Assembly: GCF_003704095.1 (NCBI RefSeq)
Contig: NW_020845867.1
Location: 434,001-498,000, forward strand
Direction of reading: 5' to 3'
From: Pocillopora damicornis
Lineage: Eukaryota
Length of the DNA: 64,000 bases
Translations under genes and position numbers: made by a program
In this document: one piece after another, positions 27,968-62,420 of the stretch
Numbering within the stretch: the first letter of the stretch is position 1
Layout of the letters: each line of letters begins with the position of its first letter
Notes under the pieces: generated by a model
The model's input: only the letters and a program-made list of their open reading frames with translations
Told to the model about the DNA's origin: nothing
Databases searched by the model: none

Positions 27968-28522
27968 ATGAAAGATTGGATTAAGGTGTTTTCAGTTGTC
28001 TTCATCGGAGCTGTCGTTGCAAATTTCATTATTGTGTCAGCCAATGATAACTCTTCTACAGAGGAAGACGAGTGGAAGATCAAATGGTACCTAAATCTAA
28101 CAATAACTTGGATTGCCAAACCACCGTATGTAGCTCGACCCACCAATGGATCTACAGATAGTGGCGGTCAGGGACTGATCCGAGATACACTTTTACGATA
28201 CATGACGTATGAATGAGGTATTCTTCATGGCATCGAATACCAAGTAGAAGACCGCCAAGTTAACAGTGAATATGAAATGATCGCACTTCTGAGGCAAAAC
28301 AAAGTCCACATTGCAGCTCCTATATTTGAGCCAAAAGGGGACAGACACTACAGCGAGTTCCCATTTTTTAAAGTTGTTGATTATCCAGGAACAGACTACA
28401 TTACCACTGAAGAAGGGAACAACAAGATTAGCTATGTTTTGGATGCCGTTCTGAGGTCTTGGCCACTGCTAGCTGTCACTCTGGTCCTGACAGCCATTTC
28501 AGGAGTTGTTATGTGGGCTTTG
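27968..28522 (+). pseudogene. Channel-receptor copy A, exon 1 (signal peptide + S1 + M1) with in-frame TGA at 28214-28216
   Basis: Near-identical to copy B exon 1 (34685-35239), with GAA TGA GGT where B has GAA TGC GGT. The splice donor is intact. Pore exons 2-4 are not seen and may lie in gaps. Confidence 0.75.
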
Positions 28523-28824
28523 GTAAGTTTTGAGTTTGTGTTACCAAACAGTCTTTAGCGCCTAAAGGGCATTTTCTAACTATATGCACTACTTTTTAAC
28601 TTTTAAATAAATTTAAACCTTTGCAAAATGATTTACGTGATCTTTCAACATCAACAACCCATTTTATCTGAGAAAGATGGGAAACAATTATTACGANNNN
28701 NNNNNNNNNNNNNNNNNNNNNNNNNNNNNNNNNNNNNNNNNNNNNNNNNNNNNNNNNNNNNNNNNNNNNNNNNNNNNNNNNNNNNNNNNNNNNNNNAATC
28801 AATTAATCAACAACGCCAAACGAG

Positions 28825-29020
28825 CAAGTCGGTCAGTCTGTCAGTCAGTCACTCAGTCGGTCAGTGGGTCAGTGTTTATGGGTGATAGACAGTCAGTCAG
28901 TCAGTCAATCTGTCGGTTGGTCAGTCAGTCAGTCGATCAGGCAGCCTGTCAGTCAGTCAGTCAGTCATTCAGTCAGTCGTTCAGTCAATTGGTCTGTCGG
29001 TCAGTCAGTCAGTCAATCTG
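28825..29020. repeat. Degenerate (TCAG)n microsatellite
   Basis: Repeated tcagtcag units. Shorter reverse-complement counterpart of 41745-42245. Confidence 0.9.
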
Positions 29021-30806: not shown

Positions 30807-32087
30807 TTACTGGCTACCCCGAAGTTTTGAAACCTTTGATTCCAGTATAATAAAGTGATCTTGCATTTGTTTAAGAAGTCTTTTGCCTACTTCAAAGTCG
30901 TTGAGAATACTTTCTCTCTCAGTTAACACCATCCCTTTGTTTTCAGCTTCTGTTAAATGAATGAAATTGATTATTTCATAATGCCACTTAACCACATCAA
31001 TGGATAAGGCCCGCCGTTGAAATCAAACTGACGACAATGTTAAATAGAAAAAAAACATGCAAAAATGAAAAAAAGAAGATATATTTGTGGATGAAGTGAA
31101 TGAATTAAATGGATGGATGGATGGATGGATGGACAGAAGGATGAATGAGTAGATTGATGAAGTGATGGCTGGTAGAAAAAGTAAATAATTGTATAAATGA
31201 GTAAATCACTTAATCCGTAATAATTGATATGGGGTTAAATGGATATATCGGAAACTTAAGTGAAATGAAAAGACCGATGGATAAATGGATAGATGAATGA
31301 ATTACAGGCAGACGATACTATTCTCAATACGATGAACAAATGGACACCGTCAAAAGAAAAAAAGCTTACGCCACTCTATCGTGGAATTTTGCTGCTTGCC
31401 AGACTTCTTCCTGATAAGTAAGTCCCATATTACTCCAATACAAAGCATTCCCGCCAATACTCCAAGCAAAATGTACAGGAGTATTTTAATAAAGCTGGAA
31501 GAATCGTCAAACAAACTGAATTGTTTGGCTGGATTACTTTTGGTGTACTGTCAAAAAAGAAAGCATTCATGATTATCTTATAAATAGATCAATTAATCAT
31601 GACTCAAATCGTGCCAATCATTTCATGGGACTAAGGCAAGCGATGACAAGAAAGAGGTAATAAGGAACTAATTTCTGCTCTCTTGCATTCTAATTGGTTA
31701 CTTTTTTATCCAGTGACCTGGGTAACAGAAGTTGCTGACCTTGTTAAATGTTTTTCATGTTTCACGCACAATAGCTGATAAAGCAGAGATCTGAGCTCGC
31801 TGTTCAAATAATTCTCCCAACTTAAAGCTGTACCTTATATGTTGCAGTGATGGTTTGAGCCGACCTCAAAATGGTGGAACGCTGATAATTTAAGCAATCT
31901 GCCAGGTATTTTCTGTCCTTTGAAAAGAGAACCCCGACATCTCTTTGAAGTTCCAATTTCTTGACGGTGAGAAGCGTTTTCAGTTTTTCTCTTGAGTGAT
32001 AAAAGGTGTTTGCGTAGTGATCTATGAATAATCCATCGACTTTCTTGGACTGCACATCTTTAATAGCGTCTTCGATACTGTTGCGCA
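30807..32087 (-). pseudogene. Channel-receptor copy A, exons 5-7 on an inverted contig (32087-31834, 31547-31370, 30949-30807)
   Basis: Translates to RNSIEDAIKDVQSKKVDGLFIDHY..., M4 ILLYILLGVLAGMLCIGVIWDLL and coiled coil ...LLKQMQDHFIILESKVSKL, nearly identical to copy B exons 5-7. The contig is flanked by 100-N gaps on both sides. Confidence 0.75.
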
Positions 32088-32544
32088 CTAGATACAGTAT
32101 GAAAAAATATCAAATTATTAACACAACAGCCATACTGCCGACCGTTGTACACTTGAGAGTCTGGGCAGAACGACCTAACGTACCAGTCGGTTTATTACGC
32201 TCAACTGACGTACAAGGTTTTAGCTGATGACCTTTGCATAGATTGTTCAGACGTCGTTCTTAAGGCTAACGGCTTACAAGGAAGATCAGTAGACTCTAAT
32301 TCCTAAATTAGGCAATTAATTGTAGCAAATGGATTGATTGAATATGACGGTGCATACTCCATCGAAGTATCCAAGACATGAAACCCTTGTCATGTCCGTG
32401 GTTGATGGGCCATGCTTTGTAACGGGTTGTTTGTCCAATTGGTTNNNNNNNNNNNNNNNNNNNNNNNNNNNNNNNNNNNNNNNNNNNNNNNNNNNNNNNN
32501 NNNNNNNNNNNNNNNNNNNNNNNNNNNNNNNNNNNNNNNNNNNN

Positions 32545-32664
32545 TTCTCTGTCGTCTGGATCTTATTTGGCCTCATAGCTATGGCAATTTTCATGGCATA
32601 TGTCACTACTGCATTGACAGCTCTCTCTCTGCAACTTGAACCAACCAGCCTTCGTGGTGTTCAA
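32545..32664 (+). pseudogene. Truncated duplicate of copy C exon 3 (M3 helix)
   Basis: FSVVWILFGLIAMAIFMAYVTTALTALSLQLEPTSLRGVQ, with N>Y in the xAN motif and donor GTTAGT changed to GTTACT. No downstream exons occur before the copy B upstream region begins. Confidence 0.75.
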
Positions 32665-34684
32665 GTTACTTTGAAAAAATATCACTCAATGAGAATTAAC
32701 TCTCTCGTCTTTTAATTACCAATAATAACACTGGTCAAAATATTCCCGTACATTTGTCAAACGTTTGTTCTTTTAATGATAAAGGTTGATATCCCATCTT
32801 TCTTAAAGTAACCGGAGTTGCTTACGGTACTAGTGCATGCCATTTAGATTTTTAGTGTTACCATTTGCAAATACATGTGAAGTAAATCGACATTAAAACT
32901 TCCATCAGGAACGTAACGAAAAAAGAGATATAAAATGAATAAATGATGAATATATTTGCTAAGTTCTCACCAAAGTCGTTTTCATTTTGTATTGATTCTT
33001 CCTTGAAAAGATGGGTCTTTTTTTCATTTTAAGGAAAATAAAATGTGACTTAAATGATGATGACTTCATATCCAGCTTTCTCATAATTAATTTTCCAAAG
33101 TCTGTTCAGTATAATAAAGTATTTTTTCCCAGTAATGTGCTAAGGGCAGAGTGCATCAAAATTTGCATTTTAATTGGCTTCTCGTGAAAGAAATCGAATT
33201 TTTTTTTCTCCAGCCAAAATAATATAAAACTTGAAATTTTTAGCCTTTGGAGTTCATCGTGTTAACTGAACGCTTTTAAAGAAGAAAACTTTCCGCAACA
33301 GATCAATGTATGTTGTTTAGGAATTCAGAGGACTCATTAGACACACTGCTTTCCTTATACGAATACATGTTAATGTGCTATTTAACTACCCTTAGGGCGT
33401 GAATTTCTAACTAAGTGGCGTTTTTAAATAAAATACATCGATGGCAAAGAATAGTTAGAATGTCCCCCAATAACTACTGACTATCCGAATTGATAAGACT
33501 TAAATTTTTTACTTAGAATCCATGCCAGTTCTTGCTTCATTTTATCTCGACATCTACTAATTATCAACTTTTCTAAGTGAGAATAGTAAACCTATGAAAT
33601 ATATAAATAACCATATTGCCGTTATTATATATGCGTTAGGCTAAATATTATAACTTTTGCCAGTTGATGACAACTGGATACCATCAATACAGTGAGTCAA
33701 ATAAATCTGTGTCCTGGGGCTGTTTATCTGATCCTGCCATTAAAATGGGATCTTTTCTGAGGCATCTTTAGAGAGCAAAGAAGTGCATTGATAATTTAAA
33801 ATTAATTCAAAATTTAACTTAGGCATTAAAAGGCGAGAAAACGAAAGTTTCTACCAAAGTGTTAGCCAATCGAAATCAAGATACAGTTTGAATTGAACAA
33901 TTTGACGGTATAAGGATGGTCGTGTGGTAACCTAACGTATTCTGTGCTTTGTTTCTCAGTCGAGGTACAAATTAACGACAGGTGGTTCTCATGTTTAATT
34001 AACGTGTGGGTTCTTCGTTTTAGTTGTTAAGATTATACATCCAGTGGCGTTGATTGCAGTTACATTCATTTGTTCGTGATGGCCTAGCCGTATTTCACAG
34101 ATCAAGTGCGTTACATAGACAACGTCCACACTACGAAGCAGTTAAAGAAGTATCTTTGACGTACTCTAACTCTGAAAATAGCATTCAGCTCTAATTTTGG
34201 GTAAGTTTGCATGTTGAGTACGCCCGGTACGAATTTGATCGACTATTGCGGCATTCGACTGACTTCGACAATTTCTCGTCATCATTCCTTTTTTTTCTTT
34301 TTTCTTCGCGATTAACGCGCACAGTCATATGCCAGGGATATTTACAGTTTTACTTTGCTTGGTGAATGTTGTGCTCAAGACACGTATTTTACTTACTGAA
34401 TTTATGCGTCATTATGCTCTCTCAGAGGGATTGTTTTTGTCGAGATATCTTCTTTTAATTTTCATCTTAAAAAGCTGATGAAGAGTAAAGAACTTCTCGA
34501 AGCGGGCCACTTAAACTCTCTAATAATTTTAACGATTATCAATTCACTTTTTTCGAGAAGATAAAAAAATATGAGGTCTAATACAACCATTCCCTGGAAA
34601 GTTTGATTCAGTTTCGGACTAAAATCATCCCTAAAATATTTCGATAATGCAACGAAAACAATTGTCTTTTTAATCAGGGTGATA

Positions 34685-37600
34685 ATGAAAAATTGGACTA
34701 AGGTGTTTCCAGCTGTCTTCATCGGAGCTGTTGTCGCAAATTTCATCACTGTGTCAGCCAATGATAACTCTTCTACAGAGGAAGACGAATCGAAGATCGA
34801 ATGGTACCTAAATCTAACAATAACTTGGATTGCCAAACCACCGTATGTCGCTCGACCCACCAATGGATCTATAGACAGCGGGGCTCAGGGACTGATCCGA
34901 GATACGCTTTTACGATACATGACGTTTGAATGCGGTATTCTTCATGGCATCGAATACCAAGTAGAAGACCGCCAAGTTAACAGTGAATATGAAATGATCG
35001 CACTTCTGAGGCAAAACAAAGTCCACGTTGCAGCTCCTATATTTGAGCCAAAAGGAGACAGACACTACAGCGAGTTCCCATTTTTCAAAGTCGTTGATTA
35101 TCCAGGAACAGACTACATTACCACTGAAGAAGGGAACAACAGGATCAGCTATGTTTTGGATGCCGTTCTGAAGTCTTGGCCACTGCTAGCTGTTACTCTG
35201 GTCCTGACAGCCATTTCAGGAGTTGTTATGTGGGCTTTGGTAAGTTTGAGTTTGTGTAACAAAACAGTCTCTAGCGCCCTATATGCACTGCTTTTTTATT
35301 GCTTAATAAATTTAAACCTTTGCAAAATGATTTACGTGATCTTCCAACGTCAACAACCCATTTTATCTGCGAAAGGTGGGAAACAATTATCATGATTGAA
35401 GGACAAAAATAATTCAACCACAGACTGTCTGACTTAACTAGAGGGTACTCGTCGGGGAGCTAGGCCACATGCGCAGTTCATAATTATAAATATTAATAAC
35501 TATACCCGGTTCATAACTATAAAATGTGACAAGCGTTCTTCGTGTAGTTAAGAACTAAAATGCCACACTTAGAAAAACATTGTCGAAAGTGTGGAGTATG
35601 GAGTAAGCATTTGAATTTGGATTATTTGATCTTAGGAGCACTATTTTGTGTCCTTAAGAGACGGTTAGGAAGTGTCACGGCAAAAAAGATATATTTTGAA
35701 ATCATTCATTTTCTACCTCTTTATCAACAACAGCGACCGGCACATCTTGCAGCGGGTAAGCAACCGTTTGGGGATACACATTAAGAAATTTGATCGTATT
35801 TATTTCTTCATTAATAATATAACACCTTTTTTCTTGTTTACTAAGAATTGTTTCTTCACTTTTTTCAGGACACTTACTGGAATAGTGAAGAGTTTCCACG
35901 TTCATTCATCAAAGGCTCATGGGATGGATTTTGGTGGTCTTTTATTTCGATGACCACAGTAGGGTAAACCTCTTTAGTAACATAACTAGCTTTGCAAAAA
36001 ATGTTGTCAAACACCTAATGAATTTTGGAGATTTTATTTAAATTTATGGACACTACAAATTTTAATTGGACCTCAAAACAGTGGACCAGAGAAGCCTCCC
36101 TCGTTGATGTCCAATCTTTATTTCGGGCCGATTCAGCATGGTCCAGCCATCTAATTTTGGATGTTCTATCATGATCAGTGTGCAAGCAGATTTAGGTGAT
36201 AATGATCTCTTTCGTCTCAGGTATGGTGACAAATCTCCCAAATCAGTTCCTGCACGGATATTCTCCATTGTTTGGATTCTCGTGGGCCTGATTGTTATGG
36301 CAATCTTTACAGCGAACGTCACTTCAGCCCTGACGGCTCTTTCCCTGGAAACCGAACCAAGTAGCTTTGCTAATAAGAAAGTGAGGCTGATAGATTACTA
36401 AACGATGAAAAAAAACGTGGCATGTTATCATTCCTGTTCTTGCCGTTATTCCTCTTATTCTTCTCCTGCGTCCTCTTTTTCTTTTCCGTTGTCGTCATGT
36501 CCTTTTTAAAAACGATCTAAAAAGTTATTATTATAATTATACAACTGTGTTGTAGAAAACTATAATATGTCTGATAAAAAAATTTTTTTCGTCAGGTTGC
36601 AGTTATAGGAAATGGGACAGAGTACCAACATGCACTACAGGAGGAGGCTGAACCAATAGGTATATATGTACAATTCCATAACCACTGGATGCAATTAGTT
36701 GTTCTAAAACCAGAGTGTAAGCTTTACCAATTGAATAAGCAACCCGTTGCAAGCATGGCCCATCAACCCTGGACACGAAAAGGGTAAAATGTCTTGGATA
36801 CGTCGACGGAGTATGCACCCTCATATTCAATCAATCCATTTGCTACAATTAATTGCTTTAATTTAAGAATTATAGTCAACTTGTTTTCCTTGTGAGCCGT
36901 TAGCCTTAAGAACGACGTCTCAACAACCTATTCAAAAGTCAACAGCTACAGTCCTGTACGTCAGTTGGGTGTAATAAACCGACTGGTACGTCAGGTCGTT
37001 CTGCTCGGTTCGTTTTTAAATGAACTAATTAAATTCTTGGGTATGTTGAAAGTGATTGTTGACATTTTTGAGGAGTCTTTTCTTAGTTAGCACACCAGCT
37101 TTCCAGAGTCAGTCGTTGAAAGAAGTTGGTGCTGTAAGTTAAAAGTTGCGGGAAATCTCAATTATTGATGTAGTTCGCTACACTAGGTGATTGTTGATGA
37201 CACTATTTAATTTCTCGTCACTATTTCTTTTAAATTCATGCCAGTCTCTTCAGTGTACGAGGGTCGGCATTCTGTCTGCCGTGTTAAAACTTTGTTTTTT
37301 TTTTTTTCATACTGTATCTAGTGCGCAACAGTATCGAAGACGCTGTTAAAGATGTGCAGTCCCAGAAAGTCGATGGATTATTCATAGATAACTACGCAAA
37401 CACCTTTTACCACTCAAGAGAAAAACTGAAAACGCTTCTCACCGTCAAGAAATTGGAACTTCAAAGAGATGTCGGGGTTCTCTTTTCAAAGGACAGAAAA
37501 TACCTGGCAGATTGCTTAAATTATCAGCGTTCCACCATTTTGAGGTCGGCTCAAACCATCACTGCAACATATAAGGTACAGCTTTAAGTTGGGAGAATTA

Positions 37601-38594
37601 TTTGAACAGCGAGCTCAGATCTCTGATTTATCAGCTATTGTGCGTGAAACATGAAAAACATTTAACAGGGTCAGCAACTTCTGTTAGCCGGGTCACTTAG
37701 ACAAAAGTAACCAATTCGAATGCAGGAGAGGAGAAATTAATTCCTTATGACTTCTTTCTTGTCATCGCTTGCCTTAATCCCATGATTGGCACGATTTGAG
37801 TCATGATGAATTGATCTATTTATAAGAAAATCATGAATGTTTTCTTTTTTGACAGTCCACCAAAAGTAATCCAGCCAAACAATTCAGTTTGTTTGACGAT
37901 TCTTCCAGCTTTGTTAAAATACTCCTGTACATTTTGCTTGGAGTATTGGCGGGAATGCTTTGTATTGGAGTAATATGGGACTTACTTATCAGGAAGAAGT
38001 CTGGCAAGCAGCAAAATTCCATGATAGAGTGGCGTAAGCTTGTTTTCTGTTGACGGTGTCCATTTGTTTATCGTGTTGTGAATAGTATCGTCTGCCTGTA
38101 ATTCATTCATCTATCCATTTATCCATCGGTCTTTTCATTTTACTTAAGTTTACGAATCTATCCTTTCAACCCCACATCAGTCATTACGGATTAAGTGATT
38201 CAGTCATTTATACAATTATTCACTTTTTCAATCAGCCATCCCTTCATTAATCTACTCATTCATCCTTATATCCATCCATCCATTCATTCGATTCATTCAC
38301 GTCATCCACAAATTTATCTAATTATTTTTTCTCATTTTTGCATGTTTTTTTTCTATTCAACATTGTATTCAGTTCGATTCCAACGGCGGGCCTTCTCCAT
38401 TGATGTGGTTATGTGGCATTATGAAATAATCCAACTTCATTCATTTAACAGAAGCTGAAAACAAAGGAATGGCGTTAACTGAGAGAGAAAGTATTCTCAA
38501 CGACTTTGAAGTAGCCAAAAGACTTCTTAAACAAATGCAAGATCACTTTACAACACTGGAATCAAAGGTTTCAAAAATTCGGGATAACCAGTAA
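34685..38594 (+). CDS. Copy B: GluR0-like ligand-gated K+ channel / compact iGluR-like protein, ~482 aa, exons 34685-35239, 35869-35963, 36221-36380, 36596-36659, 37322-37575, 37856-38033, 38452-38594
   Basis: Open spliced frame: signal peptide, S1 (WIAKPPY...VHVAAPIFE), M1 (SWPLLAVTLVLTAISGVVMWAL), pore WDGFWWSFISMTTVG|YGDKSP, M3 ARIFSIVWILVGLIVMAIFTANVTSALT, S2 (VAVIGNGTEY...DGLFIDNY...DVGVLF), M4 and heptad-rich tail. Confidence 0.9.
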
Positions 38595-52521: not shown

Positions 52522-52611
52522 TGCTTTGACAAAGGGCTAGCACTCGAAACTCTTTACGAAAGCTAATTTACGTTGTCAACTCAGTTGATGATACTAAATT
52601 ACCCTGTTATA

Positions 52612-52648
<37 letters not shown>

Positions 52649-52665
52649 TTTACCCCCTTTATTCA
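52522..52665 (+). mobile_element. Decayed copy of the hammerhead-bearing short repeat
   Basis: TTTGACAAAGGGCTAGCACTCGAAAC...GTCAACTCAGTTGATGATACTAAATTACCCTG matches the reverse complement of 23305-23408. The catalytic box is mutated. Confidence 0.6.
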
Positions 52666-52705
52666 TTAATCTTCCTTTAGCCAATAACTATATTTGAAAT
52701 CCTAG

Positions 52706-55700
52706 GATTCATATTGGAACAGTGAAGAGTTTTCGCGTTCATTCTTCAGAGGCTCCTGGGATGGTTTTTGGTGGTCTTTCATTTCCATGACAACCGTAGG
52801 GTGAGGAGAGCTCTAAGTATTAGGATTTATCCCAAATCTTAATTGAGGTATCAGTTACATATTGATCAGGTGACTTTTCATTTCTTACGATGTATGTATG
52901 TACGATGCAGATTTTCCCCTCTTCTGGCGAGGATCGGGCAAAATTCATGCATTGTACTGCTAGAGTGCTTCCCGAAAATCTGTCACAATGCTTCAGCTTT
53001 AGCTAACTAGTCAGTAAAAGTATAACCACTGACTTTAGACTTCCCATAATCAATTTAGCTTATTAATTCACGACAGGGGAGGTCGAGCAGTTAATCGCAT
53101 ATGCGCTCTCTGAGCTAATGTTCTCCTACCCCCACACGCACACAAAACTGATCACACGTTTTATAAAAACGTATTTTCTGTTTGTTCTTTGCTAGATATG
53201 GAGACAAGGCTCCAAAATCTGTTCTGGCTCGTATATTCTCGGTCATCTGGATCCAGTTTAGCCTTATAATCATGGCTGTCTTCACGGCAAATGTAACATC
53301 TGCATTGACAGCTCTTTCTTTGCATCTAGAACCAACAAGCCTTGATGCCGTTGATGTTAGTGCAGATAATTTGACATTGCATTACATCAGTTATAATGAG
53401 CTATAACAAGGCATCTGTTTTACAACCCTGCCGACTCCAAGAAACTTATATAGAGAATTGTCTCTATTTTAGTAATTGACTATCCATAAAAAACAAGGAC
53501 CATGTAAAAGAAAAAAGTAGCCAAAACGGATAACATAAACTTCCTATCATAGTACGGCACTTTCTACAAATGGGGCTCACTAGACTTAAAACATTTATCT
53601 GTGATTCTTTGTATATGTGCTGTTCTTGGTTTTATTACTAACGTATTTTCTTTGGAGTCTTCCAAGTAAGAAAAGTCATGTGGAATTTAATCTGTCCAAA
53701 TTACCATGAATGTTATTTTGCGCTTTATCCTTAGGTTGCAGTGTTGAGCAATTGAACTGAATACCAATATGCGCTGGAGGAAAATGCACGTCCGAAAGGT
53801 CAATGGGAAATCAATTTAGCTAAACTAGATATTGACATATATAATAAACAGAATTATGAAGTTGTTAATTCTTGGTAACTTTTTGATCTCGGTAATGAAA
53901 TAGAGAAAGATATTTTTTATTTCGTCAATAGCAAAGCAAAAATAAACGATTCTGAGTCCCCATAAGGAGTCGTATCTAAGACTCTGTGGTGAGTTAGGGG
54001 TATAACTTGGTTCAGACAAATGCATGTGATGTGCGTCCTGCATGCTGCTAGGTTCAGTAATGTCAAAAGCGTCGTGTGCATAAACACAATAAGAGAGATA
54101 AAAAATTTAGTCAATGAGTATAACACAAAAAAAAATTATGTTCCTTTTTGTTGCCAAATTGGATTATTTAAAAAAATTATTTTAAGAGACGTCATCTATT
54201 GTTCCGTCTTCGTAGTGTTTAACAGCATCGATGACGCCATTGAAGCACTGGAATCAAAGCAAGTCAACGGAATGTTATTGGACCGCTACGCTGCTTCCTA
54301 TTATCAAAGAGATGGCAAACTGGAATCCCTTATAACTGTAAAGAAGTTAGATCTACAAAGAGACATAGGAGCGCTGTTTCATAACAACCGAAAGGCGCTT
54401 GCCGAGTGCTTAACAAACAATTTCCGCTCAGAGATATGGAGATCGGTTCAAGGCATTACTGACTTATACAAGGTAATCTTTAAAGTAAAGAAAAAAGACA
54501 TAATTTTGGCATCAAATTTCTGGATTCTTTATGCACAGTTCACCGATTTCTCAATACTACGAGTAGAATCAAGTAAAGTTGATAATGTAAGTGGTGCTTG
54601 TGCTGTACGGTAAAGTGCGATATGACAAGCAATGTTAATAACACACGTGAAGTCAGCGGCAGCATTGTAGTAACCGTGTGCCAAGTAAGGAATTAACAAA
54701 CAGACAAACCAACCAAAAAATAACAACTAACCATAAAGCAAAGGATATCATATGTTATTTCATGGTTTCATTTCATAATTAGCTAACACAAGAAAGGCCT
54801 CCGACAAGCTTCAATCTCTTTGACGAATCCTCCCCATTCGTCAGAAATTCCATGTATACATCACTTGGAGTGTTGGCTATTTTGCTTGTTATTGGTATGT
54901 CGTGGGAAGTGCTCATTAGACTGAAAGGAAAAGGAAAACGAAATTTCACCATGCACGTGGGTGAGCGTGTTGATCAATTTTCTTTAAAAGTCAGCTTTAA
55001 TATAAATTAATACATACCACGCAGCTGAAGAGAACTTTTTGCGCGCACTGACTGGCTAATTCGGAAGTGAATAACAAGTACTCTCCACCTCCGAGAGGCA
55101 GATGAGACAAAATCGCGTGTCAGTAGTTTAATGTCCGACCATTTTTCGGTATATTAAAATAAATAACTTGTGTTTTTTATCTTTGGGGTATAAACTAAAT
55201 AATTATTCACCTCAGTGTCGTTAAAAGTGGTGGATATTTACCTCGCCACTTCGCCGCTATGCGGGTATTCGTCACTCTTCACCTCCTCTAAGGTGAATAA
55301 TTGTTAAATAAAAAGTAGAGATCAGCAAAACGGAAATGAAGATGGAAGGCAAGAGATACGCTTGACCAAAATCTTCATCACTGTTCTTAAAGATGAGGGC
55401 CATTTTGGGACGGATTGATAGAGATTCAATCCTTCTGTGTTTCAAAACATTCTTCAAAAAACACTGATATGTAGAGAACTTGTATTGAGCATATTCCCTA
55501 AAAATCTGTTCATATTTGTATTAATTTCAAATAATGAAGATAACTTAAGGAAAAATGTCATTATGTAAATTTAAAAAGTAAAAACCTAAAAATGTTTAAG
55601 AGATTAAAATCGATTCTAATTAAAAAGGCGAACGACGAAGGCAAAAGAAAATATGATATAACATGAAAACTTAAAGAATACTTTACCAGTTGCATTCGAG

Positions 55701-56099
55701 TGAAAAGCTCTCCCCCACGTCTCTGTAGTTATACTGTGTCTCTATAATGAGGGTGAATTACTGGTTTCTACTTGTTGTGAATGCGACTGCAAAGTGAAAA
55801 ACTTTGAAAATAAAAGAGCCTATCACGATAAATGCAATTCATGCTCTGATCGCAGCGACTGTTGAGTACAGCTAGTATCTTCTGGTAACTTCAATGTTTA
55901 ACATTGTACCATGGAACGATAACCGCAGTTTTTAAAATTACGATTTTTCTTTTTCGCAGATGAGGTCATTAATAAAGGACGGGTCTCAGAAGGAGATACA
56001 GTTCGCGCCGAACTTGAAGTAATGCGACGGCTCCTGCGCACCACACAGGAACAGTTTGACAAACTGGAGTCCAAAGTTTTTAACATGAGACTGAAATGA
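52706..56099 (+). pseudogene. Copy D: GluR0-like K+ channel gene with in-frame TGA at 53753-53755; exons 2-7 at 52706-52800, 53196-53355, 53735-53798, 54216-54472, 54783-54960, 55960-56099; exon 1 not seen
   Basis: TTVG|YGDKAP and FTANVTSALT are intact. Exon 4 reads VAVLSN*TEY versus GNGTEY (GGA>TGA). Exon 1 may lie in the gap at ~52234-52333. It could be a null allele or base error rather than a fixed pseudogene. Confidence 0.75.
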
Positions 56100-56130
56100 C
56101 ACTGATCAGAAAAGCTGTTAATCCATGTAA

Positions 56131-56278
56131 CAAATAGATTCCATGTTTCCCTACATTTGTTCAGTAATAGATCACAGGAGGTGCAGCCAATTGTGTCATG
56201 CACCGATGTTCTAACCACATTTTTACGTCTACTGTGATCTTCTATTTCACAGACCTACGGCAACATGGAATCTATTTG
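56131..56278. mobile_element. MITE-like foldback element just after the copy D stop codon
   Basis: 20-bp inverted repeats CAAATAGATTCCATGTTTCC / GGCAACATGGAATCTATTTG (1 mismatch) plus internal AGATCACAG/CTGTGATCT. Confidence 0.7.
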
Positions 56279-57661
56279 ATTTATATGATAAAAAAGCAAA
56301 ATGTTGCTAATGCTGACGTCGTATATTCGTCAATCTTCCCAATGTATCATAAATGAGAACCAGTCAAAACGCAGGTAGTTTTCAGCTTATAATATAGTGC
56401 ATTATCAGCTTTGTTATGAGGATAATTGTTTAGTTAACTGAGATAGTTTTTTCAGTAAGAATGGCACTTCATTTGGAATTTTTCTGGCTTCGATACTCAT
56501 TGGAACTATTTGATCATGAGAAGGAAAGCAAATTCACGAAAATAAGAGATCCTCGCAGCTATGAACACTACTGAGTTACTAGTTGAAATAAGAAATGAAA
56601 AAAACTCTAGGACTGTTAATGTGAACGAGAACATGATCAGTTCAGTAAGAATCCTTTATCTTATGGTGGCGGAGAGATGCTTTGCAACAAGAGCAGCGAC
56701 GAGGCTGAGCATGCATTAATAAGGATAGGAAAGCAGCGAGAGATCTTCTTCAGATGCTGAAACACTTCAACAACCCTGAAACGGAAATAAACAAATTTTC
56801 CACATGATTACAAGAACATGTTATGTAAATTATTACATCTGTCCTTTCTACTAAATACATTTCTAGAATGAGTCCAAACAAAGCCAATGAAGTTGAAAAG
56901 ATAATCTCACAAAAGTTTGCCATATTTTCTCCAAGGCCGAGAATGACTTACAAACGATTTACCTCTCAAATCTATCAAGGAAAACCGGAAAACAAAAGAG
57001 AGGTAGCACATATGTTTCTTGTTTGCATTTAATTGCATTTTAATTTTGCTCTGTATTTGTCGCTGTTGGTTATTTTCCCATAAGAAAATAGTGAAGCATT
57101 GTCTTATAGAAATCCCACAGTTTTCTTTTATGATAAACCAATTTTTTATTTTATGTTTCTCTCCAGAGTTCCGATGCTATTTACAATTTTCGCCTCAAAA
57201 CACCCTTTGCATCTTTGTTAACATGATTGATTTGAATCCCAGGAGTCTCCTTTCATGATTCACGAATTTTAAAGTATTTTAGGATTATTGCTCCTCCCGG
57301 CATGGAAAATGTTTGTCATGATTAAAAGCACGCAATAATCAATGGTTGAACCTTCTAGGATGTTCTCAAATTAACCAACAGATGTTAAACGAAACAATAA
57401 AAGGGCAAATAAAATCTTCAGCGAAGCATTAATTATGTATATAGTAAAGCCCTAAACTCGGATAGCGAAAGCAGTCATACGAATTAAGAGGTAAGCCTAT
57501 TCATACACCGTATCTATTTTCTCATATTTCGAAGAAAGAGATTTCATGTGATATGTCTTTGTTGTGGCGTAGACGCTTCTCTGAAAATGAGTAAGATGTT
57601 GATATATTTACATTTATCGTATGCAATATGATCTTAGCTCCTTTTAGAGCAACAATTGGAA

Positions 57662-60600
57662 ATGGAATGGCGCAACATAATCATAGCTGCCGTATTTCAA
57701 CTCATTTTTGCCACCCTTGTCATCTTGACCACTGCTCTAGAAAGCAATGCGAACAAACCTGATCTGCATCCACTTCTTTCCTTAGCGAGGAAAGATAATA
57801 CAACAGTGAAACTCATGAGAGTAGCGTGGATCTCAAACCCTCCATACACATATTTACCTTCGAACGATTCTACCATTTACGAAGTAATTCATGGATTAAT
57901 ACAAGAAACTTTAATGCGTTACATGACGGTGGAATGTGGTGTGCTTTACGTTCATCCCGTTATATACCAATTTAAAATGTTTCAAGTTCACAGAGAGGAA
58001 ACGTTGATAGATATGATGAGAAAAAATGAGGTGGATTTGGCTTGTCCTGTGCTCGAGCAACAGCATTCTCGGAAATACGGTGAATTTCTTTTTTTCAAAG
58101 TCAGTGACTATCCAGGAACGGACTTCATTCGTGATGATTTTGAAACCAATGCTTTCGCTGTCGTCTTTCAGTCGATACAAAAATCTTGGCCTTTGTTGGC
58201 TATAACTTTGAATCTCACGGCCATTGCTGGGATCATTATGTGGATTCTGGTAAGTTCGTAACACTTCGGTTGTAAAGTAGCATTTTCTCTCTAAAAAGCC
58301 AAGGGTTTGATATCTCTCTTTTGCTTGGAGGGGTGTTGCAATTTTTTAGGGTTGGTTTTGGAAGAAGGATACCACAGAACCCAGAAAGTGCTTTAACCTC
58401 TGCTCTTCCATCGAAGAAACCATTTCATCTCGACAAACAATGGGGTAATTTACCCCTTTTATGAAAACGAGTAAAATCATTTTGTGACCATAACAGCTTG
58501 ATAGAGTAAGGAGCCTATTTTAATCATTGCACCCTCATAAGACGAGTGAATTTAAGTGCAGATACAAACAATTGGTTTTTAATTGTGTCATTCGCTCTAA
58601 GCTTTGATCCACGCAACCTAATCTCGTGACGGTTGATCTTTAGACGCAAACGATTTTACATCGGTGTTAACACTAACTCTTCTATATCTCCCAAGCATCT
58701 TTGGGATGATTCACCCATTTCCTTTATGTGCTTTTTTTTTCCGGAATTAAGGACACATACTGGAACAAAGATGAGTTTCCACGAAAGTTCATTCAAGGGT
58801 CTTGGCAAGGATTCTGGTGGTCGTTCGTCTCTGTCACCACTGTAGGGTGAGATGACAAAACGCGTTTATTTCCTTCTCAAGCTTTTTCCATTTTTTATAG
58901 ATTTTCAATTTAATTATCTTGGCTTTGAGCGAATTTTGCTACTTAAATTCCCCTGAAGTATAGCCTCGGAAGTCGTTTTCTTTTGTGATGCAATTTACAG
59001 TTAAGTTTTTTTATTTGCTTAGTGAGAGTACACGTGATTAAAAATGTAGTAATATACGTATGCTCCAACATACTAAAAATTAAGGTGCTGAAGATGTTTC
59101 TTCTTTCATATGTTAAACAGTGTTAGCTCATTTTCTTTAAATGCTATGCAATTTTTATCATTCAAATCTTAATCCAGCTCGAGAATTGATAAAAAAAAGT
59201 GACTTAAGGTTAGGAAGGACATATTAGTTTGCACCACACTGTGTTTAATGCTTTGAAGTCTGAAACTATAGGCATTGTGTTTAATGATGTTCAACATCAG
59301 TCTACGTTTAGCGTTTTCTCTTTATCAATCAAAGTATGTTTTAAAACAGATACGGTGACAAAGTTCCAAAGTCCATTCCAGCACGACTTTTCTCCACTTT
59401 ATGGATCCTTATTGGAATGATCTTTATGACAATTTTTTCGGCTCACATCACGTCCTCTCTCACGGCTCTTTCACTGGATCTGGAACCAACCAGTCTCGCA
59501 GGTGTTAAGGTTAGAATCCGTAGAAATCACCTTTTTACATTCATGTTCTGAGTAAGGAGCTTACTGTTCCAAATGACCAAACATCTCTCAGTAAAAAAGG
59601 TTGCTATAATTTGCAGTCTAGCGATTTTCTTTTTTCGTTGGTGTATTTGCTATGAAAATTTGTTTCAGTTCGCATGATTGAGATGAAATTACTAATTAAT
59701 TCTAATTTCTGTGATTTCTTTTCAAGGTTTAAAGCAATGTTTTTTTCGGATGGTATTTTACCCACTAGAACACTTTTAGGGAAACATATATCCAACACTC
59801 ACTAGCTGATAATACTCGAAAGTAACGTTCGTTGATCCGTCCGAATCGACCGTCGATTCGATTCGGAATCGTGAAGCAGAAATGATAACCCGCAAACTGA
59901 TGCATTCATGACTCAAGAATATATCATGAGTGGAGAAGGATAAGTGTACTACTAAGTGTATGAATCGTAAATGGGAGTCACGACTTCTGTCGATTCAGGA
60001 GCACTTGAACACTAGGGGGAAAACGATAACCCGCAAAAACATAGTCCGTTTTCTTGAGTGCAATCTTTGCATTGAAACGAAGATCAACATAAAAAGTTCA
60101 TTTTTTTTCCCGTTAGTCTGCTTTTTTCTTTTCTTGTGTTTGTTTGGCTTATTTATTTATTTGTTTTTTGCTGATTTTTTTTTCATTGCTTGTTAGGTTG
60201 CGGTGCTGGGCAATGGAACTGAATACCAACATGCACTTGAGCAAAATGCTCACCCGAAAGGTGACCTCAATAAATAGCCGACTCGACCCAATGAAGAGTG
60301 ACTTACGTCATTTAATGTCAAAGTCGATACTCTATAATAAAAAAGGGGAAATTGAAATATAACATATGTGTAAGAGACTATGCTCGTTGACGCTTATGAC
60401 AGGTGTGATTTGAAATTCTAATGGTAGAATTATAATACGAAACATTGATTATTCTCTAGACTTAACCGTCAATAAGAAGGCAAGCATTTGTATTCCTGAA
60501 AAGAAAAAAAGAAAAAGACAGCTGAATCGTACAAAACTATTCATCTACTATAATTCTTAGGAAATCAATGCCCCCAAGGCCTTTCCGTGATGGCTTAGTA

Positions 60601-62420
60601 ATTGTCCTCAATACTTAAATAACCTTTTTGTCTCAAAATTCTATTCATTTGTTGCGTTTAGTTTACGAAAAAATAGACGAAATCATCAAGGCTGTCAAAA
60701 CAAAGGAAGTAGAAGGAATTTTCTTGGATCGCTACACTGCTTCCTATCACCACTCCAGAGGTGAACTGGAGTCTCTTATCTCTATCAAGAGCTTGGATCT
60801 CTCCAGGGAGATCGGAGTGCTTTTTTCGGAGGACAACAGGGAACTAGCGCGTTGCTTGGAATTTTATCGTCCAAATATCATGATGCTGACTCAAACTGTC
60901 ACTTCTTCTTACAAGGTGGAGTCGCCATAAAAAGTGGCAAGGGTAGTCTATACCTAACAAGGGTAGTCTATACCTAACATACATTATTATCCAGAATTCA
61001 TTTTTTAAGATAATGGAAAAGTAATTGAAACCCCTGATCGTATACCCCTAAGAGACAAATAAACTTATAAAATTTTTAGTTCATAATTACATGTCACTGG
61101 AATAGTTCATTTTATAGTGGTGTACTTAGTTGCCAAGCCTTTGATTTGGAGTGAGGCTGAAGGTGACCTTGTTGTGATAGAGACCGGTATCTGGTTAGCA
61201 TGATAACAAAGAAATTTACCAAACCAAACCTAAACCAAACAGAGCGCATCCATCTCCTCCACATCAACTCTACTAACATTTCATTGCCCTTCTATTTAGT
61301 TTTTTAATTTTTTCTTCTGCCTTGTACTCGTTTAGTTTTGACGGATAAACGAAATTCCAGTTAACCCAATGGCATTTAGTTAGTCTAACTTAATCTCGCC
61401 CTTTCATTCAATTTGTATTTCCTTTATAACAAACTGAAATCCAACCCGAGTTCTGCAACGAGAGCGTAACTAAGCTCAGCGTAACTGTACCACATCTCAA
61501 GGACATAGGTAAAAAGACACAAACGTGCATTGAATTATATTCACAAGATCATCTAAAAACCAACTTTTATCTTTTTCAGCTGATGGAACAAAAGCGAACA
61601 AGGAAAGTCAATTTGTTCGACACGTCTTCCTCATTTCTTAGTGTTTTCATGTACACAACCCTCGGCATACTTACTGGTTTGCTTATGACTGGGACACTCT
61701 GGCAAATTCTCAGAAATAACTGCAAGACTGAAATCAATAATAACATTATTTCAGGTAAGTGTGCCGCTGTCCATAAGAAACGCACCCGCTCAATGGCTAG
61801 TGCGCTGAATTCGAGGTCGAGAGGTCCACCTGAATGACGTAACCGAGTCACTGTGTGGTTTTCGTGGGAAGGACTCTTTACTCTCTCCACTAAGGAGTAT
61901 GAATGGGAATCGGTGAGATTTCAGGGAATCTTGACGAAATGATTAAGGAAAACCTTCCTGTGGCAACATGCTACAGAAACCAGCTAAATGAGCCAATCGA
62001 ATCGACTCAACCAGATATCGCTCTACAGCAGTTAAAGCACTCTTTTTTTCTATCAATACTTGTCACTTGGGTAAAGTCGTCATTTTTCTTTTGAATACTT
62101 CTGCAAAAATTCTTGAAAGCCGTTTCCTGTCGACTGCTGTCGCTTCCAGTGCACACCACAGCAAACAAAAGAAAGCAAAGCAAGCTTTAATTCGTTTAGA
62201 TTATCGTTGCGATAAAATACTCCATTATGAACTTTGTTTCCTCGATGACGGACATGATTGTGGGCCCTATTTCTTTTTATGTCTCTCAGTAGAGCCAGTG
62301 AAGGAATGGAAGCTAAGAAGAAGCGAAGCCATCCAAGAAGACTTGGAAACAGCAAAAAGAATGCTATACCAAATCCAAAAGCACTTCGAGAAACTCGAAG
62401 CTGAAGTTCTCAGAATATGA
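57662..62420 (+). CDS. Copy E: GluR0-like ligand-gated K+ channel, ~488 aa, exons 57662-58249, 58752-58846, 59350-59509, 60197-60260, 60662-60915, 61580-61754, 62290-62420
   Basis: Same exon phases. WISNPPY, FWWSFVSVTTVG|YGDKVP, FSAHITSSLT, GNGTEY, IFLDRY, M4 VFMYTTLGILTGLLMTGTLW, tail LYQIQKHFEKLEAEVL. Confidence 0.9.

What the first reader, a model, noticed from the sequence alone, without database searches (positions are those of the whole stretch)
27968..62420. Tandem array of compact, ATD-less ionotropic-receptor-like genes with an intact K+ selectivity filter (GluR0-like ligand-gated K+ channels in an animal)
Seen: five paralogs plus a fragment share a 7-exon gene encoding signal peptide - S1 - M1 - pore loop FWWSF(I/V)S(M/V)TTVGYGD - M3 (FTANVTSAL, similar to the iGluR SYTANLAAF gate) - S2 - M4 - short coiled coil, about 485 aa. 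The filter codons are split by an intron (TVG|YGD), so ORF-level annotation misses it. Known: vertebrate-type iGluRs have an amino-terminal domain and no GYG filter. Cyanobacterial GluR0 has the K+ filter but no ATD or M4, and rotifer AvGluR1 has the filter together with eukaryotic architecture. Inference: these genes are a distinct intermediate (no ATD, with M4, with K+ filter). The signal peptide would place S1/S2 outside the cell and invert the pore as in iGluRs. They could be extracellular-ligand-gated hyperpolarising channels, expanded like a chemoreceptor family. Conserved spliceosomal introns show they are genuine host genes.
Basis: partly seen in the sequence, partly recalled or inferred. 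Interest (0 to 1): 0.92.

Follow-up and report, generated by a model that had tools for sequence, protein, structure and literature searches.

The report
Coral glutamate-receptor-like potassium channel genes
A stony coral carries a tandem cluster of expressed genes for small receptor-channel proteins that pair a bacterial-type, glutamate-receptor-like ligand-binding clamshell with a textbook potassium-channel pore, a family found across cnidarians and in a few bilaterians that no paper we could search has described or tested.

Summary
The window is from a Pocillopora coral. It holds three intact 7-coding-exon genes: B 34685-38594, C 42315-46530 and E 57662-62420, of 482-488 aa. Copy D has its exon 1 where an assembly gap sits and an in-frame TGA in exon 4. 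Copy A is scrambled across two gaps and also has a stop. A sixth gene lies just past the window.

Spliced transcripts confirm every coding intron of C and E and the five D introns the window holds, including the phase-2 intron inside the TTVG|YGD filter.

The encoded layout is signal peptide, S1, M1, K+ pore, M3, S2, M4 and a C-terminal helix.
- The pore matches Ion_trans_2, and M3 matches Lig_chan.
- A family profile aligns with bacterial GluR0-type proteins across S1-pore-S2 (hhalign E 7e-46).
- In an AlphaFold model (pLDDT 85.7), S1/S2 superpose on the GluR0 ligand-binding core (Z 21.4). The whole chain matches ATD-deleted GluD2, NMDA and AMPA receptors.

The family has at least 23 loci in this genome. 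It occurs throughout Cnidaria and in a hemichordate and an annelid. Databases call all members "uncharacterized", and no paper describing them was found.

The best reading is tetrameric, extracellular-ligand-gated K+ channels. Ion selectivity, the ligand and gating are untested.

The parts
34685..38594 (+). Copy B, intact gene, 482 aa
   Evidence: Coding exons 34685-35239, 35869-35963, 36221-36380, 36596-36659, 37322-37575, 37856-38033 and 38452-38594. All introns are GT-AG and the frame is open. It is 94% identical to a Pocillopora verrucosa RefSeq protein, P0186. No read or transcript test was done for B here.
42315..46530 (+). Copy C, intact gene, 485 aa
   Evidence: Coding exons 42315-42878, 43291-43385, 43578-43737, 44288-44351, 44495-44751, 45771-45942 and 46385-46530. 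All six introns are bridged by spliced contigs in polyA RNA runs X1 and X2 (study P1) and X6 (study P3).
57443..63226 (+). Copy E, intact gene with UTRs, 488 aa
   Evidence: 5'-UTR exon 57443-57490. Coding exons 57662-58249 (the transcript exon starts at 57636), 58752-58846, 59350-59509, 60197-60260, 60662-60915, 61580-61754 and 62290-62420, with a 3' UTR to about 63226. It is 99.8% identical to P. damicornis XP_027047716.1.
51366..56542 (+). Copy D; exon 1 not in the window, in-frame stop in exon 4
   Evidence: UTR exons 51366-51435 and 51841-51891. Coding exons 2-7: 52706-52800, 53196-53355, 53735-53798 (holds a TGA), 54216-54472, 54783-54960 and 55960-56099. Exons 2-7 are 98% identical to P0189, whose transcript contig L004 is full length. 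The gap at 52234-52333 lies where exon 1 should be and was not filled.
27968..28531 (+). Copy A exon 1 (B-like) with a TGA at 28214-28216
   Evidence: tblastn gives 91% aa identity to B exon 1, with a stop where B has Cys83. The genome search reports 1 TGA in this match.
30810..32086 (-). Copy A exons 5-7, on the opposite strand, in the contig between two gaps
   Evidence: Exon 5 at 32086-31835 (95% aa identity to B), exon 6 at 31548-31372 (98%) and exon 7 at 30980-30810 (72%). The whole contig 28797-32444 is the reverse complement of a roughly 89% nt copy of 36726-42275.
32545..32746 (+). C-like exon-3 fragment starting at the gap edge
   Evidence: 93% nt identity to 43618-43819. Its translation starts inside M3 and lacks the YGD part.
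35950..36239 (+). Selectivity filter split by a phase-2 intron (example: copy B)
   Evidence: Exon 2 ends ...ACA GTA GG|gtaaac and exon 3 starts ag|G TAT GGT GAC, which reads T-V-G-Y-G-D. The equivalent junctions are 43385|43578 in C, 52800|53196 in D and 58846|59350 in E. RNA contigs confirm those of C, D and E.

Best explanation
The cluster encodes subunits of an undescribed animal branch of the glutamate-receptor/GluR0 superfamily. Each subunit of about 485 aa has these parts, in order:
- a signal peptide;
- lobe S1 of a periplasmic-binding-protein type II clamshell;
- helix M1;
- a canonical K+-channel pore helix and filter (GFWWSF.S.TTVGYGD);
- an iGluR-type inner helix M3 (FTANVTSALTA);
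- lobe S2;
- a further transmembrane helix in the position of M4;
- a cytoplasmic C-terminal amphipathic helix.

There is no amino-terminal domain.

Inferred mechanism. Four subunits form a K+-selective pore that is inverted in the membrane, as in iGluRs. A small extracellular ligand closes the S1/S2 clamshell. For copies B and E, which keep both the S1 Arg and the S2 Asp, that ligand is probably an amino acid or a related amine. Closure pulls on the M3 bundle crossing and opens the channel. K+ efflux would then hyperpolarise or shunt the cell, making this a fast inhibitory or chemosensory receptor.

Shown here: gene structure, transcription and splicing, domain homology, and the predicted fold. 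Inferred: topology, tetramer formation, K+ selectivity, ligand gating, and the physiological sign of the response.
For: Genes and RNA: there are three open GT-AG models, and spliced transcripts exist for E, D and C.

Pore:
- Ion_trans_2 matches at E 6e-14 to 2.5e-17 on full-length relatives.
- TTVGYGD is invariant in 40/40 family members and in 4/4 window copies.
- The best PDB sequence matches are K+ channels (LmK 4h33 at 1.6e-13, then KvAP, Shaker and KcsA).

iGluR side:
- Exon 3 passes the Lig_chan cut-off (34.2 against 30.8).
- The family profile aligns with GluN1 residues 619-860 (E about 2e-9).
- Foldseek's top matches are GluD2 with the ATD deleted (9nwq), GluN1/GluN2B delta-ATD (5un1) and GluA2 LBD-TMD, with 430-476 aligned columns at probability 1.00.

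Ligand-binding domain:
- hhalign against bacterial GluR0-type proteins gives probability 100 and E 6.9e-46 over query residues 50-350.
- VIA-align gives Z 21.4 to the GluR0 core 1ii5, followed by glutamine- and arginine-binding proteins at Z 18-20.
- The S2 Asp is kept in 32/40 members and 4/4 window copies. The S1 Arg is kept in B and E.

Topology markers: N-terminal hydrophobic leaders, N-glycosylation sequons clustered in S1 and the conserved NGT in S2, and a basic stretch after M4.

Self-assembly: four copies of residues 165-272 score 0.32 against a best control of 0.00. The runs agree in at least 94% of contacts, and the partner's pLDDT is at least 64. Contacts are filter-to-filter and M3-to-M3. 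At calibration the mark was reached by 21 of 30 proteins solved as pairs of one chain and by 0 of 23 solved as single chains. That calibration used two copies and microbial proteins, so the counts hold only roughly here, and the pass may come from memory of K+ channels.

Diversification pattern: the pore is 67% identical family-wide, against 24% for S1 and S2.
Against: - No current, ligand or localisation has been measured for any member.
- The S1 Arg that binds the alpha-carboxylate is invariant in the bacterial relatives. It is kept in only about a quarter to a third of the family, and copy C lacks it. Many members may therefore bind something other than amino acids, or nothing.
- Pfam does not recognise S1/S2.
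- Exon-wise PDB sequence searches for the S2 and M4 exons gave nothing significant. M4 is assigned by position and predicted helix, not by demonstrated homology.
- A K+ signature alone does not guarantee K+ selectivity in an inverted, iGluR-gated pore.
- The monomer model has a modest pTM of 0.64, and the global TM-scores to iGluR chains are only 0.36-0.48.
Confidence: 0.68

Rival explanations
1. The proteins are K+ channels, but the clamshell no longer gates them with a small ligand. It would serve as a structural or assembly domain, or bind a protein or matrix partner, and the channel would be a leak channel or be regulated from the cytoplasm through the C-terminal helix.
For: The S1 Arg is not conserved family-wide. 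S1/S2 fall below Pfam detection. Some subfamilies carry N-terminal CUB+Ig, fn3 or EGF modules typical of protein-protein recognition.
Against: The clamshell fold is predicted with high confidence and superposes on ligand-bound GluR0 (Z 21.4). The S2 Asp and the GNGT-type loop are conserved. The split S1...S2 arrangement around the pore is kept in every subfamily over more than 500 million years, and it is the arrangement that couples cleft closure to M3.
Confidence: 0.17
2. They are ligand-gated but not K+-selective. That would make them non-selective cation channels, excitatory like other iGluRs, despite the signature sequence.
For: All characterised metazoan iGluRs other than AvGluR1 are non-selective. 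Selectivity also depends on the packing around the filter, and that packing is unmeasured here.
Against: The signature is kept, and so is the whole K+-channel pore context: the WW aromatic cuff in GFWW, the TTVGYGD motif with its trailing Asp, and an Ion_trans_2 match across the pore helix and inner helix. This region is 54% identical to bacterial GluR0-type proteins. GluR0 is K+-selective (Chen et al. 1999, as cited in PMC12332018).
Confidence: 0.1
3. The array is bacterial contamination, a recent bacterial transfer, or a set of dead gene copies, and not a functional host gene family.
For: The closest non-animal relatives are bacterial (Bacteroidota-type GluR0 proteins). Two of the window's copies carry stops. 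The assembly is fragmented here.
Against: There are six GT-AG introns at conserved phases. PolyA RNA is spliced in independent studies. Orthologues of each copy exist in other corals. The family is present in Anthozoa, Hydrozoa, Scyphozoa, a hemichordate and an annelid. In the tree the animal sequences form one clade with deep subfamilies.
Confidence: 0.02

Closest known systems
GluR0 (Synechocystis slr1257) and bacterial 'Group 1' glutamate-gated K+ channels (SBP_bac_3 + Lig_chan-Glu_bd + Lig_chan + Ion_trans_2)
   Same: The layout S1-M1-pore-M2/M3-S2 with a TXVGYGD filter and no ATD. hhalign gives E 6.9e-46 over 289 columns. The pore region is 54% identical. The LBD model superposes on 1ii5 at Z 21.4. 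The S2 Asp is kept.
   Different: GluR0 is prokaryotic and about 360-400 aa. It has no transmembrane helix after S2 and no C-terminal domain (10.1101/2021.01.27.428399; PMC11479355). The S1 Arg is invariant there but variable here. The coral genes have spliceosomal introns, an M4-position helix and a C-terminal helix.
AvGluR1 of the rotifer Adineta vaga
   Same: An animal iGluR-superfamily subunit carrying the TXVGYG K+ signature and an M4. It is regarded as a link between GluR0 and modern iGluRs (PMC12332018). One review calls it K+-selective (PMC11479355).
   Different: AvGluR1 has the full eukaryotic architecture including the amino-terminal domain, which the coral proteins lack.
Eukaryotic iGluRs (AMPA/kainate/delta/NMDA, epsilon, lambda; insect IRs; plant GLRs)
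   Same: The predicted LBD-TMD fold and topology: Foldseek's top hits are ATD-deleted GluD2, GluN1/GluN2B and GluA2 LBD-TMD. The M3 gate motif resembles SYTANLAAF and exon 3 hits Lig_chan. IRs likewise lack an ATD and form expanded, tandemly arrayed chemoreceptor families with variable ligand pockets (PMC2924276).
   Different: iGluRs, IRs and GLRs have a Q/R/N-type non-selective pore loop, not a K+ filter. Most have an ATD. Here the pore is a canonical K+-channel pore. Homology of M4 was not demonstrable by sequence.
Two-transmembrane and voltage-gated K+ channel pores (KcsA, LmK, KvAP, Shaker)
   Same: The pore helix, the filter and the inner helix. These are the best PDB sequence matches. 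Databases mis-name some family members as 'voltage-gated K+ channel subfamily D/F/B'.
   Different: There is no voltage sensor and no T1 domain. The pore is embedded in a clamshell and, by inference from the signal peptide and the extracellular-type S1/S2, it is inverted in the membrane.

Membership tests
iGluR superfamily in the broad sense (clamshell LBD interrupted by a P-loop channel) | S1 and S2 lobes flank M1, the pore loop and M3 in one polypeptide | tested here: met
   hhalign is collinear over S1-M1-P-M3-S2, and the secondary-structure order of the AF2 model agrees.
iGluR superfamily in the broad sense (clamshell LBD interrupted by a P-loop channel) | Bilobed periplasmic-binding-protein type II ligand-binding domain | tested here: met
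   VIA-align: 1ii5 at Z 21.4, rmsd 2.6 A, 214/221 residues; 2pyy at Z 20.4; GLR3.4 LBD at Z 18.3. This rests on a predicted model with pLDDT 85.7.
Eukaryotic iGluR (Pfam Lig_chan PF00060 with ANF_receptor ATD) | Amino-terminal domain (ANF_receptor / LIVBP-like) | tested here: not met
   S1 begins about 25 residues after the leader, and no Pfam ATD hit was found. Some paralogous subfamilies carry CUB+Ig, fn3 or EGF modules in its place.
Eukaryotic iGluR (Pfam Lig_chan PF00060 with ANF_receptor ATD) | M3 gate of SYTANLAAF type; Lig_chan model match | tested here: met
   Exon 3 scores 34.2 bits against a cut-off of 30.8. Full-length relatives score 23-38 bits, with several above the cut-off. The motif is F(T/M/S)A(N/H)(V/I)T(S/T)(A/S)LTA.
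Eukaryotic iGluR (Pfam Lig_chan PF00060 with ANF_receptor ATD) | M4 helix after S2, homologous to iGluR M4 | tested here: inconclusive
   A helix at 405-443 with a basic stretch after it sits in the right position. The Foldseek alignments span it. The M4-exon profile finds nothing in the PDB by sequence.
Eukaryotic iGluR (Pfam Lig_chan PF00060 with ANF_receptor ATD) | Non-selective cation pore loop with a Q/R/N site | tested here: not met
   The pore loop is TTVGYGD, a K+-channel filter, in all members.
GluR0-type prokaryotic glutamate-gated K+ channel | TXVGYG filter inside an SBP_bac_3-type clamshell | tested here: met
GluR0-type prokaryotic glutamate-gated K+ channel | Only M1-P-M2, with no transmembrane helix after S2 and no C-terminal domain | tested here: not met
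   An extra TM helix and a C-terminal helix of about 40 residues are present in all window copies and in the relatives.
GluR0-type prokaryotic glutamate-gated K+ channel | S1 Arg and S2 Asp that hold the amino-acid ligand (totally conserved in bacteria, PMC2950845) | tested here: inconclusive
   Asp is kept in 32/40 family members (4 more have Glu) and 4/4 window copies. In the 40-member alignment, Arg occurs 11 times at one of two adjacent columns and 4 times at the other. It is present in B and E, while C has Gln-Lys. The alignment is uncertain by one column.
K+ channel pore (Ion_trans_2) | Pore helix, filter and inner helix matching PF07885 | tested here: met
   E 6e-14 to 2.5e-17.
K+ channel pore (Ion_trans_2) | Four-fold assembly around the filter | tested here: inconclusive
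   Complex prediction scores 0.32 against a best control of 0.00. The mark is reached, with filter and M3 contacts. The pass may reflect memory of solved K+ channels, and the test was calibrated on two copies, not four.
K+ channel pore (Ion_trans_2) | Measured K+ selectivity | not testable with these tools
   This needs electrophysiology.

The most novel reading that the evidence does not exclude
These genes represent a surviving, ancient metazoan lineage of extracellular-ligand-gated K+ channels. It would predate the cnidarian-bilaterian split and preserve the long-postulated intermediate between bacterial GluR0 and modern iGluRs: K+ pore and bacterial-type clamshell, M4 already gained, ATD not yet gained. 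In that reading, cnidarians and a few bilaterians would have a fast ionotropic inhibitory or chemosensory modality based on K+ in place of Cl-. Dozens of receptor types would have diversified in their ligand pockets and in added CUB/Ig, fn3 and EGF modules.
Probability: 0.4. Interest if true: 0.88.

Novelty: new variant of a known kind. Interest (0 to 1): 0.78.

Why it matters
The accepted account of glutamate-receptor origins is a binding protein fused to an inverted K+ channel, followed by gain of M4, gain of the ATD and loss of K+ selectivity. It rests on two proteins, bacterial GluR0 and rotifer AvGluR1. A large, expressed animal family with the K+ pore, a bacterial-type clamshell and an M4-position helix but no ATD would make the order of those steps testable, by phylogeny and by electrophysiology.

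The family would also be the first broad group of candidate extracellular-ligand-gated K+ channels in animals. That points to an unrecognised inhibitory or chemosensory signalling mode in corals, anemones, hydroids and jellyfish, organisms whose neurotransmitter receptors are only now being de-orphanised.

In practice these genes are mislabelled. Databases call them 'voltage-gated K+ channel subfamily D/F/B', 'Cubilin' or 'uncharacterized'. Because their Lig_chan scores lie near the cut-off and they have no Lig_chan-Glu_bd hit, iGluR surveys may also miss them. That last point is an inference, not something checked here.

Tried and rejected
- Pfam on the S1 and S2 exons, alone and in full-length relatives, gave no SBP_bac_3 or Lig_chan-Glu_bd hit. 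Homology showed up only by profile-profile and structural comparison.
- Exon-wise PDB profile searches found no hit for the M4 exon and only insignificant hits for the S2 exon, E 0.06 or worse. Sequence therefore says nothing about whether M4 is homologous to iGluR M4.
- The idea that the family is restricted to Cnidaria was suggested. It was rejected after a search with a divergent member found Saccoglossus and Dimorphilus proteins with the same layout.
- The idea that copy A is an allelic haplotig of B is judged unlikely, because nucleotide identity is only about 89-92%. A partial segmental duplication of the B-to-C unit, with the middle contig placed in the wrong orientation, explains the pieces better. 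This is not proven.
- No tree with canonical iGluRs, plant GLRs or AvGluR1 was made. None of those sequences could be obtained by reference with the tools, and typing them from memory is not acceptable.
- Joined (spliced) models were built only inside local scripts, to check frames and to compare with proteins already fetched. Searches went exon by exon by reference. Full-length analyses used the database protein P0001 (Pocillopora meandrina, about 97% identical to copy E) and its relatives.
- The gaps were not filled.
- Literature searches for 'GluR0-like' and for glutamate receptor + TVGYG + cnidarian returned no paper. Five further searches of GluR0, AvGluR1 and iGluR-evolution terms returned no paper on this family, but subscription journals are not covered.
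- The search of earlier findings returned nothing.

Full report
**What is in the sequence**

The motif FWWSF(I/V)S(M/V)TTVG occurs four times on the + strand. Each lies at the end of a 95-nt exon. A 160-nt exon follows that begins (G)YGDK and runs through an M3-like helix. I mapped exons by stop-to-stop scanning, local tblastn and inspection of splice sites.

Three copies are clean GT-AG models of seven coding exons:
- B: 34685-38594, 482 aa.
- C: 42315-46530, 485 aa.
- E: 57662-62420, 488 aa.

Exon lengths (95, 160 and 64 nt for exons 2-4) and intron phases are identical between copies. The intron in the filter is phase 2, inside the Gly codon that precedes Tyr, so the spliced product reads T-T-V-G-Y-G-D. 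None of these three models touches an assembly gap.

**The gaps, as the scan's program asked**

The sequence is not continuous across gaps 28697-28796 and 32445-32544.
- Region 26831-32746 is a copy, about 89-93% identical at the nucleotide level, of 33601-43819. That source region is copy B, the spacer, and the 5' part of copy C.
- The copy comes in three pieces, and the middle contig (28797-32444) is in the opposite orientation.
- 'Copy A' therefore consists of a B-like exon 1 (27968-28531), exons 5-7 on the minus strand (32086-30810), and a C-like exon-3 fragment that starts exactly at the gap edge (32545). Its exon 1 has a TGA at 28214-28216 where B has a nearly invariant Cys.
- Turning the middle contig would make the whole region collinear with the B-C unit, and A's exons 2-4 would then fall in the first gap. 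This suggests a partial segmental duplication with one contig placed in the wrong orientation. It cannot be proven here.

Gap 52234-52333 lies where exon 1 of copy D should be.
- A 2.35-kb transcript-size contig (L004) matches two UTR exons left of the gap (51366-51435, 51841-51891) and exons 2-7 right of it.
- Its positions 120-694 have no counterpart in the window.
- I did not fill any gap.
- D also has an in-frame TGA in exon 4 (53735-53798) where the transcript has GGA.

A sixth gene with the same split filter lies immediately right of the window (L006).

**Expression and splicing**

Three contigs of 2.2-2.3 kb from different sequencing runs (L001-L003) carry the whole 488-aa ORF. They match copy E at 99-100% and skip all six coding introns. 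They also add a 5'-UTR exon (57443-57490) and about 0.8 kb of 3' UTR.

For copy C, contigs of polyA RNA libraries from two independent studies bridge all six introns at exactly the modelled GT..AG sites, including 43385|43578 inside the filter. I laid 4501 letters, within the limit set for this genome.

Copy B was not tested with reads. Its nearest relative is a RefSeq model of Pocillopora verrucosa at 94% identity.

**Organism and family size**

Copy E is 99.8% identical to a Pocillopora damicornis protein, so the window comes from a Pocillopora coral. The genome has 234.35 Mb in 4393 contigs. It holds at least 23 exon-1 matches, and several of them lie in other tandem groups.

**What the protein is**

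Searches went exon by exon by reference. Full-length work used database proteins returned by those searches, chiefly P0001, which is about 97% identical to copy E.

Pfam results:
- Exon 3 passes the curated cut-offs of both Lig_chan (34.2 bits against 30.8) and Ion_trans_2.
- Full-length relatives match Ion_trans_2 at E 1e-13 to 1e-17, and Lig_chan at around its cut-off.
- Nothing matches on S1 or S2.

An exhaustive HMMER search with the exon-1 profile found 243 cluster representatives. Beyond the animal relatives, a full-length search reached bacterial GluR0-type proteins that combine SBP_bac_3, Lig_chan-Glu_bd, Lig_chan and Ion_trans_2.

Profile and structure comparisons:
- A 40-sequence family profile against 17 of those bacterial proteins gives hhalign probability 100 and E 6.9e-46 over 289 columns, covering S1-M1-pore-M3-S2.
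- Against the PDB, the family profile hits K+ channel pores best. It also aligns with GluN1 residues 619-860 at E about 2e-9. I could not inspect how much of that score comes from S2 and M4.
- AlphaFold2 with the family alignment gives mean pLDDT 85.7.
- Foldseek's top matches are ATD-deleted GluD2, GluN1/GluN2B delta-ATD and GluA2 LBD-TMD chains, aligned over 430-476 columns at probability 1.00. Global TM-scores are only 0.36-0.48.
- VIA-align ranks the GluR0 ligand-binding core first (1ii5: Z 21.4, rmsd 2.6 A, 214 of 221 residues, model range 47-387). Glutamine- and arginine-binding proteins follow it.

S1/S2 therefore model as the bilobed clamshell.

**Conserved residues**

- TTVGYGD is invariant in all 40 family members sampled, in the four window copies, and in the 17 bacterial relatives.
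- The S2 Asp, which holds the ligand's amino group in GluR0, is kept in 32/40 members (Glu in 4 more) and in 4/4 window copies.
- The S1 Arg is invariant in the bacterial relatives (PMC2950845). In the animal family it is kept only in a subset: B and E have it, and C has Gln-Lys.
- Family-wide identity is 67% in the pore segment, 45-47% in M1 and M3, and 24% in S1 and S2. This is the pattern expected if ligand specificity diversifies above a fixed conduction pathway.

**Topology**

The points below support an inference, and nothing here measures topology directly.
- The leaders look like signal peptides.
- N-glycosylation sequons cluster in S1, and there is a conserved NGT in S2.
- A basic stretch follows M4.
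- Because S1 and S2 form one domain, both ends of the M1-P-M3 unit must face that domain.

If the clamshell is extracellular, the pore is inverted relative to ordinary K+ channels, as in iGluRs.

**Self-assembly**

Four copies of residues 165-272 of P0001 scored 0.32 against a best control of 0.00. The runs agree in at least 94% of contacts, and the partner's pLDDT is at least 64. The contacts are filter-to-filter (225-231) and M3-to-M3 (254-270). At calibration the mark was reached by 21 of 30 proteins solved as pairs of one chain and by 0 of 23 solved as single chains. That calibration used two copies and microbial proteins, so the counts hold only roughly here, and the pass may be memory of solved K+ channels. 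I count this as weak support.

**Distribution and history**

Named members come from:
- Stony corals: Pocillopora, Stylophora, Oculina, Montipora, Acropora and Porites.
- Sea anemones: Nematostella, Actinia and Actinostola.
- Octocorals: Xenia and Dendronephthya.
- Hydrozoans: Hydra and Hydractinia.
- A scyphozoan: Rhopilema.
- Two bilaterians: the hemichordate Saccoglossus kowalevskii and the annelid Dimorphilus gyrociliatus.

The bilaterian proteins keep the leader, S1, M1, GFWWAFVTMTTVGYGD, the FTA..T-type M3, S2 and M4. Subfamilies with N-terminal CUB+Ig, fn3 or EGF modules exist.

I built a 77-row IQ-TREE (quick search, SH-aLRT support only) rooted on the bacterial proteins.
- B, C (with the D-like P0189) and E fall in a hexacorallian subfamily with a Nematostella gene at its base (support 99).
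- Orthologues of the separate copies occur in other coral genera, so the duplications are old.
- The three bilaterian sequences form one clade (support 93). It is nested among the cnidarian subfamilies, beside a Rhopilema/Actinia/Nematostella group (support 91).
- Two rows of that clade have long branches, so this placement is provisional.
- Taken at face value, the tree puts the family's origin before the cnidarian-bilaterian split.

Canonical iGluRs, plant GLRs and AvGluR1 could not be included, because no reference for their sequences was obtainable. The position of the family relative to them remains open.

**Comparison with what is known**

GluR0 lacks the NTD, M4 and CTD, and it is K+-selective (10.1101/2021.01.27.428399; PMC11479355; PMC12332018). 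AvGluR1 has the full eukaryotic architecture with the K+ signature (PMC12332018). PMC11479355 calls it K+-selective, but I could not read the primary paper.

A 2010 survey stated that the combination of a glutamate-binding site and a K+ filter was then known only in bacteria (PMC2950845). A 2025 review still cites only GluR0 and AvGluR1 (PMC12332018). A 2025 broad iGluR phylogeny mentions GluR0 only in passing (PMC12226733). Seven full-text searches found no description of this family. Subscription journals are not covered, so prior description cannot be excluded.

Every database name is 'uncharacterized', 'Potassium channel domain-containing' or an automatic mislabel.

**Verdict**

The family belongs to the glutamate-receptor/GluR0 superfamily. 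It is not a member of any described class:
- It fails the GluR0 definition, because it has an M4-position helix and a C-terminal domain, and it is eukaryotic.
- It fails the eukaryotic iGluR definition, because it has no ATD and its pore is a K+ filter and not a Q/R/N loop.

Function as a ligand-gated K+ channel is the best-supported inference, not a result.

Noticed in passing
window 48820-49770 (+) and 50725-51015 (+): A single-exon rhodopsin-family GPCR ORF of 317 aa (7tm_1 at E 1.7e-19) sits between copies C and D. A shorter GPCR-like open segment downstream has no Pfam hit and may be a decayed duplicate.
   Followed up: partly
window 18016-18486 and 20912-21277 (+): Exons of a sodium:dicarboxylate symporter (SDF, the EAAT/ASCT-type amino-acid transporter family) lie about 7 kb upstream of the channel cluster. 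So an amino-acid transporter gene neighbours candidate amino-acid-gated channels. This may be coincidence.
   Followed up: partly
window 6652-7542 (+) and 15011-15421 (-): A protein kinase ORF (Pkinase at E 1e-58, single long exon) and an exon of an ADP-ribosyl cyclase (Rib_hydrolayse at E 3e-16) with its own leader peptide.
   Followed up: partly
window 45534-45700 (intron 5 of copy C); possibly also 56546-56716: A short element has a summed contig depth of 1700-3300 in all four RNA runs, with many loose ends and strand-switch joints. This is an abundantly transcribed dispersed repeat. A similar translated motif appears in the spacer before copy E.
   Followed up: no
L006 180-3423 (genome contig C2502:498180-501423, just right of the window): A sixth family gene with the same exon order and a TTVG|YGDK split. 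It corresponds to a mis-modelled 397-aa P. damicornis prediction (P0027). The tandem cluster therefore extends beyond the finding's coordinates.
   Followed up: partly
P0223, P0227, P0244, P0258; P0223 and P0244 traced to ENA assembly ERZ26222911: Intronless family members of 460-500 aa lie on 40-50 kb eukaryote-like contigs beside a reverse transcriptase. They group with Hydractinia in the tree (support 98). This may be a hydrozoan genome with a retro-copied expansion of the family.
   Followed up: partly
P0372 (Saccoglossus), P0398 and P0404 (Dimorphilus): Bilaterian members of the family keep the full layout and the K+ filter. This implies loss in most bilaterian lineages, including vertebrates and the main ecdysozoan models.
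   Followed up: partly
P0113, P0136, P0343, P0348, P0363 (CUB+Ig); P0141, P0210, P0376 (fn3); P0349, P0350 (EGF): Some subfamilies carry protein-interaction modules where iGluRs carry the ATD. This is an independent solution to adding an N-terminal layer. One member is annotated 'Cubilin'.
   Followed up: no
window 28800-29060 and 41433-42275: Low-complexity tandem repeats (translating as SVSQSV-like runs) lie in the spacer upstream of copy C, and an inverted copy lies in the contig after the first gap.
   Followed up: no
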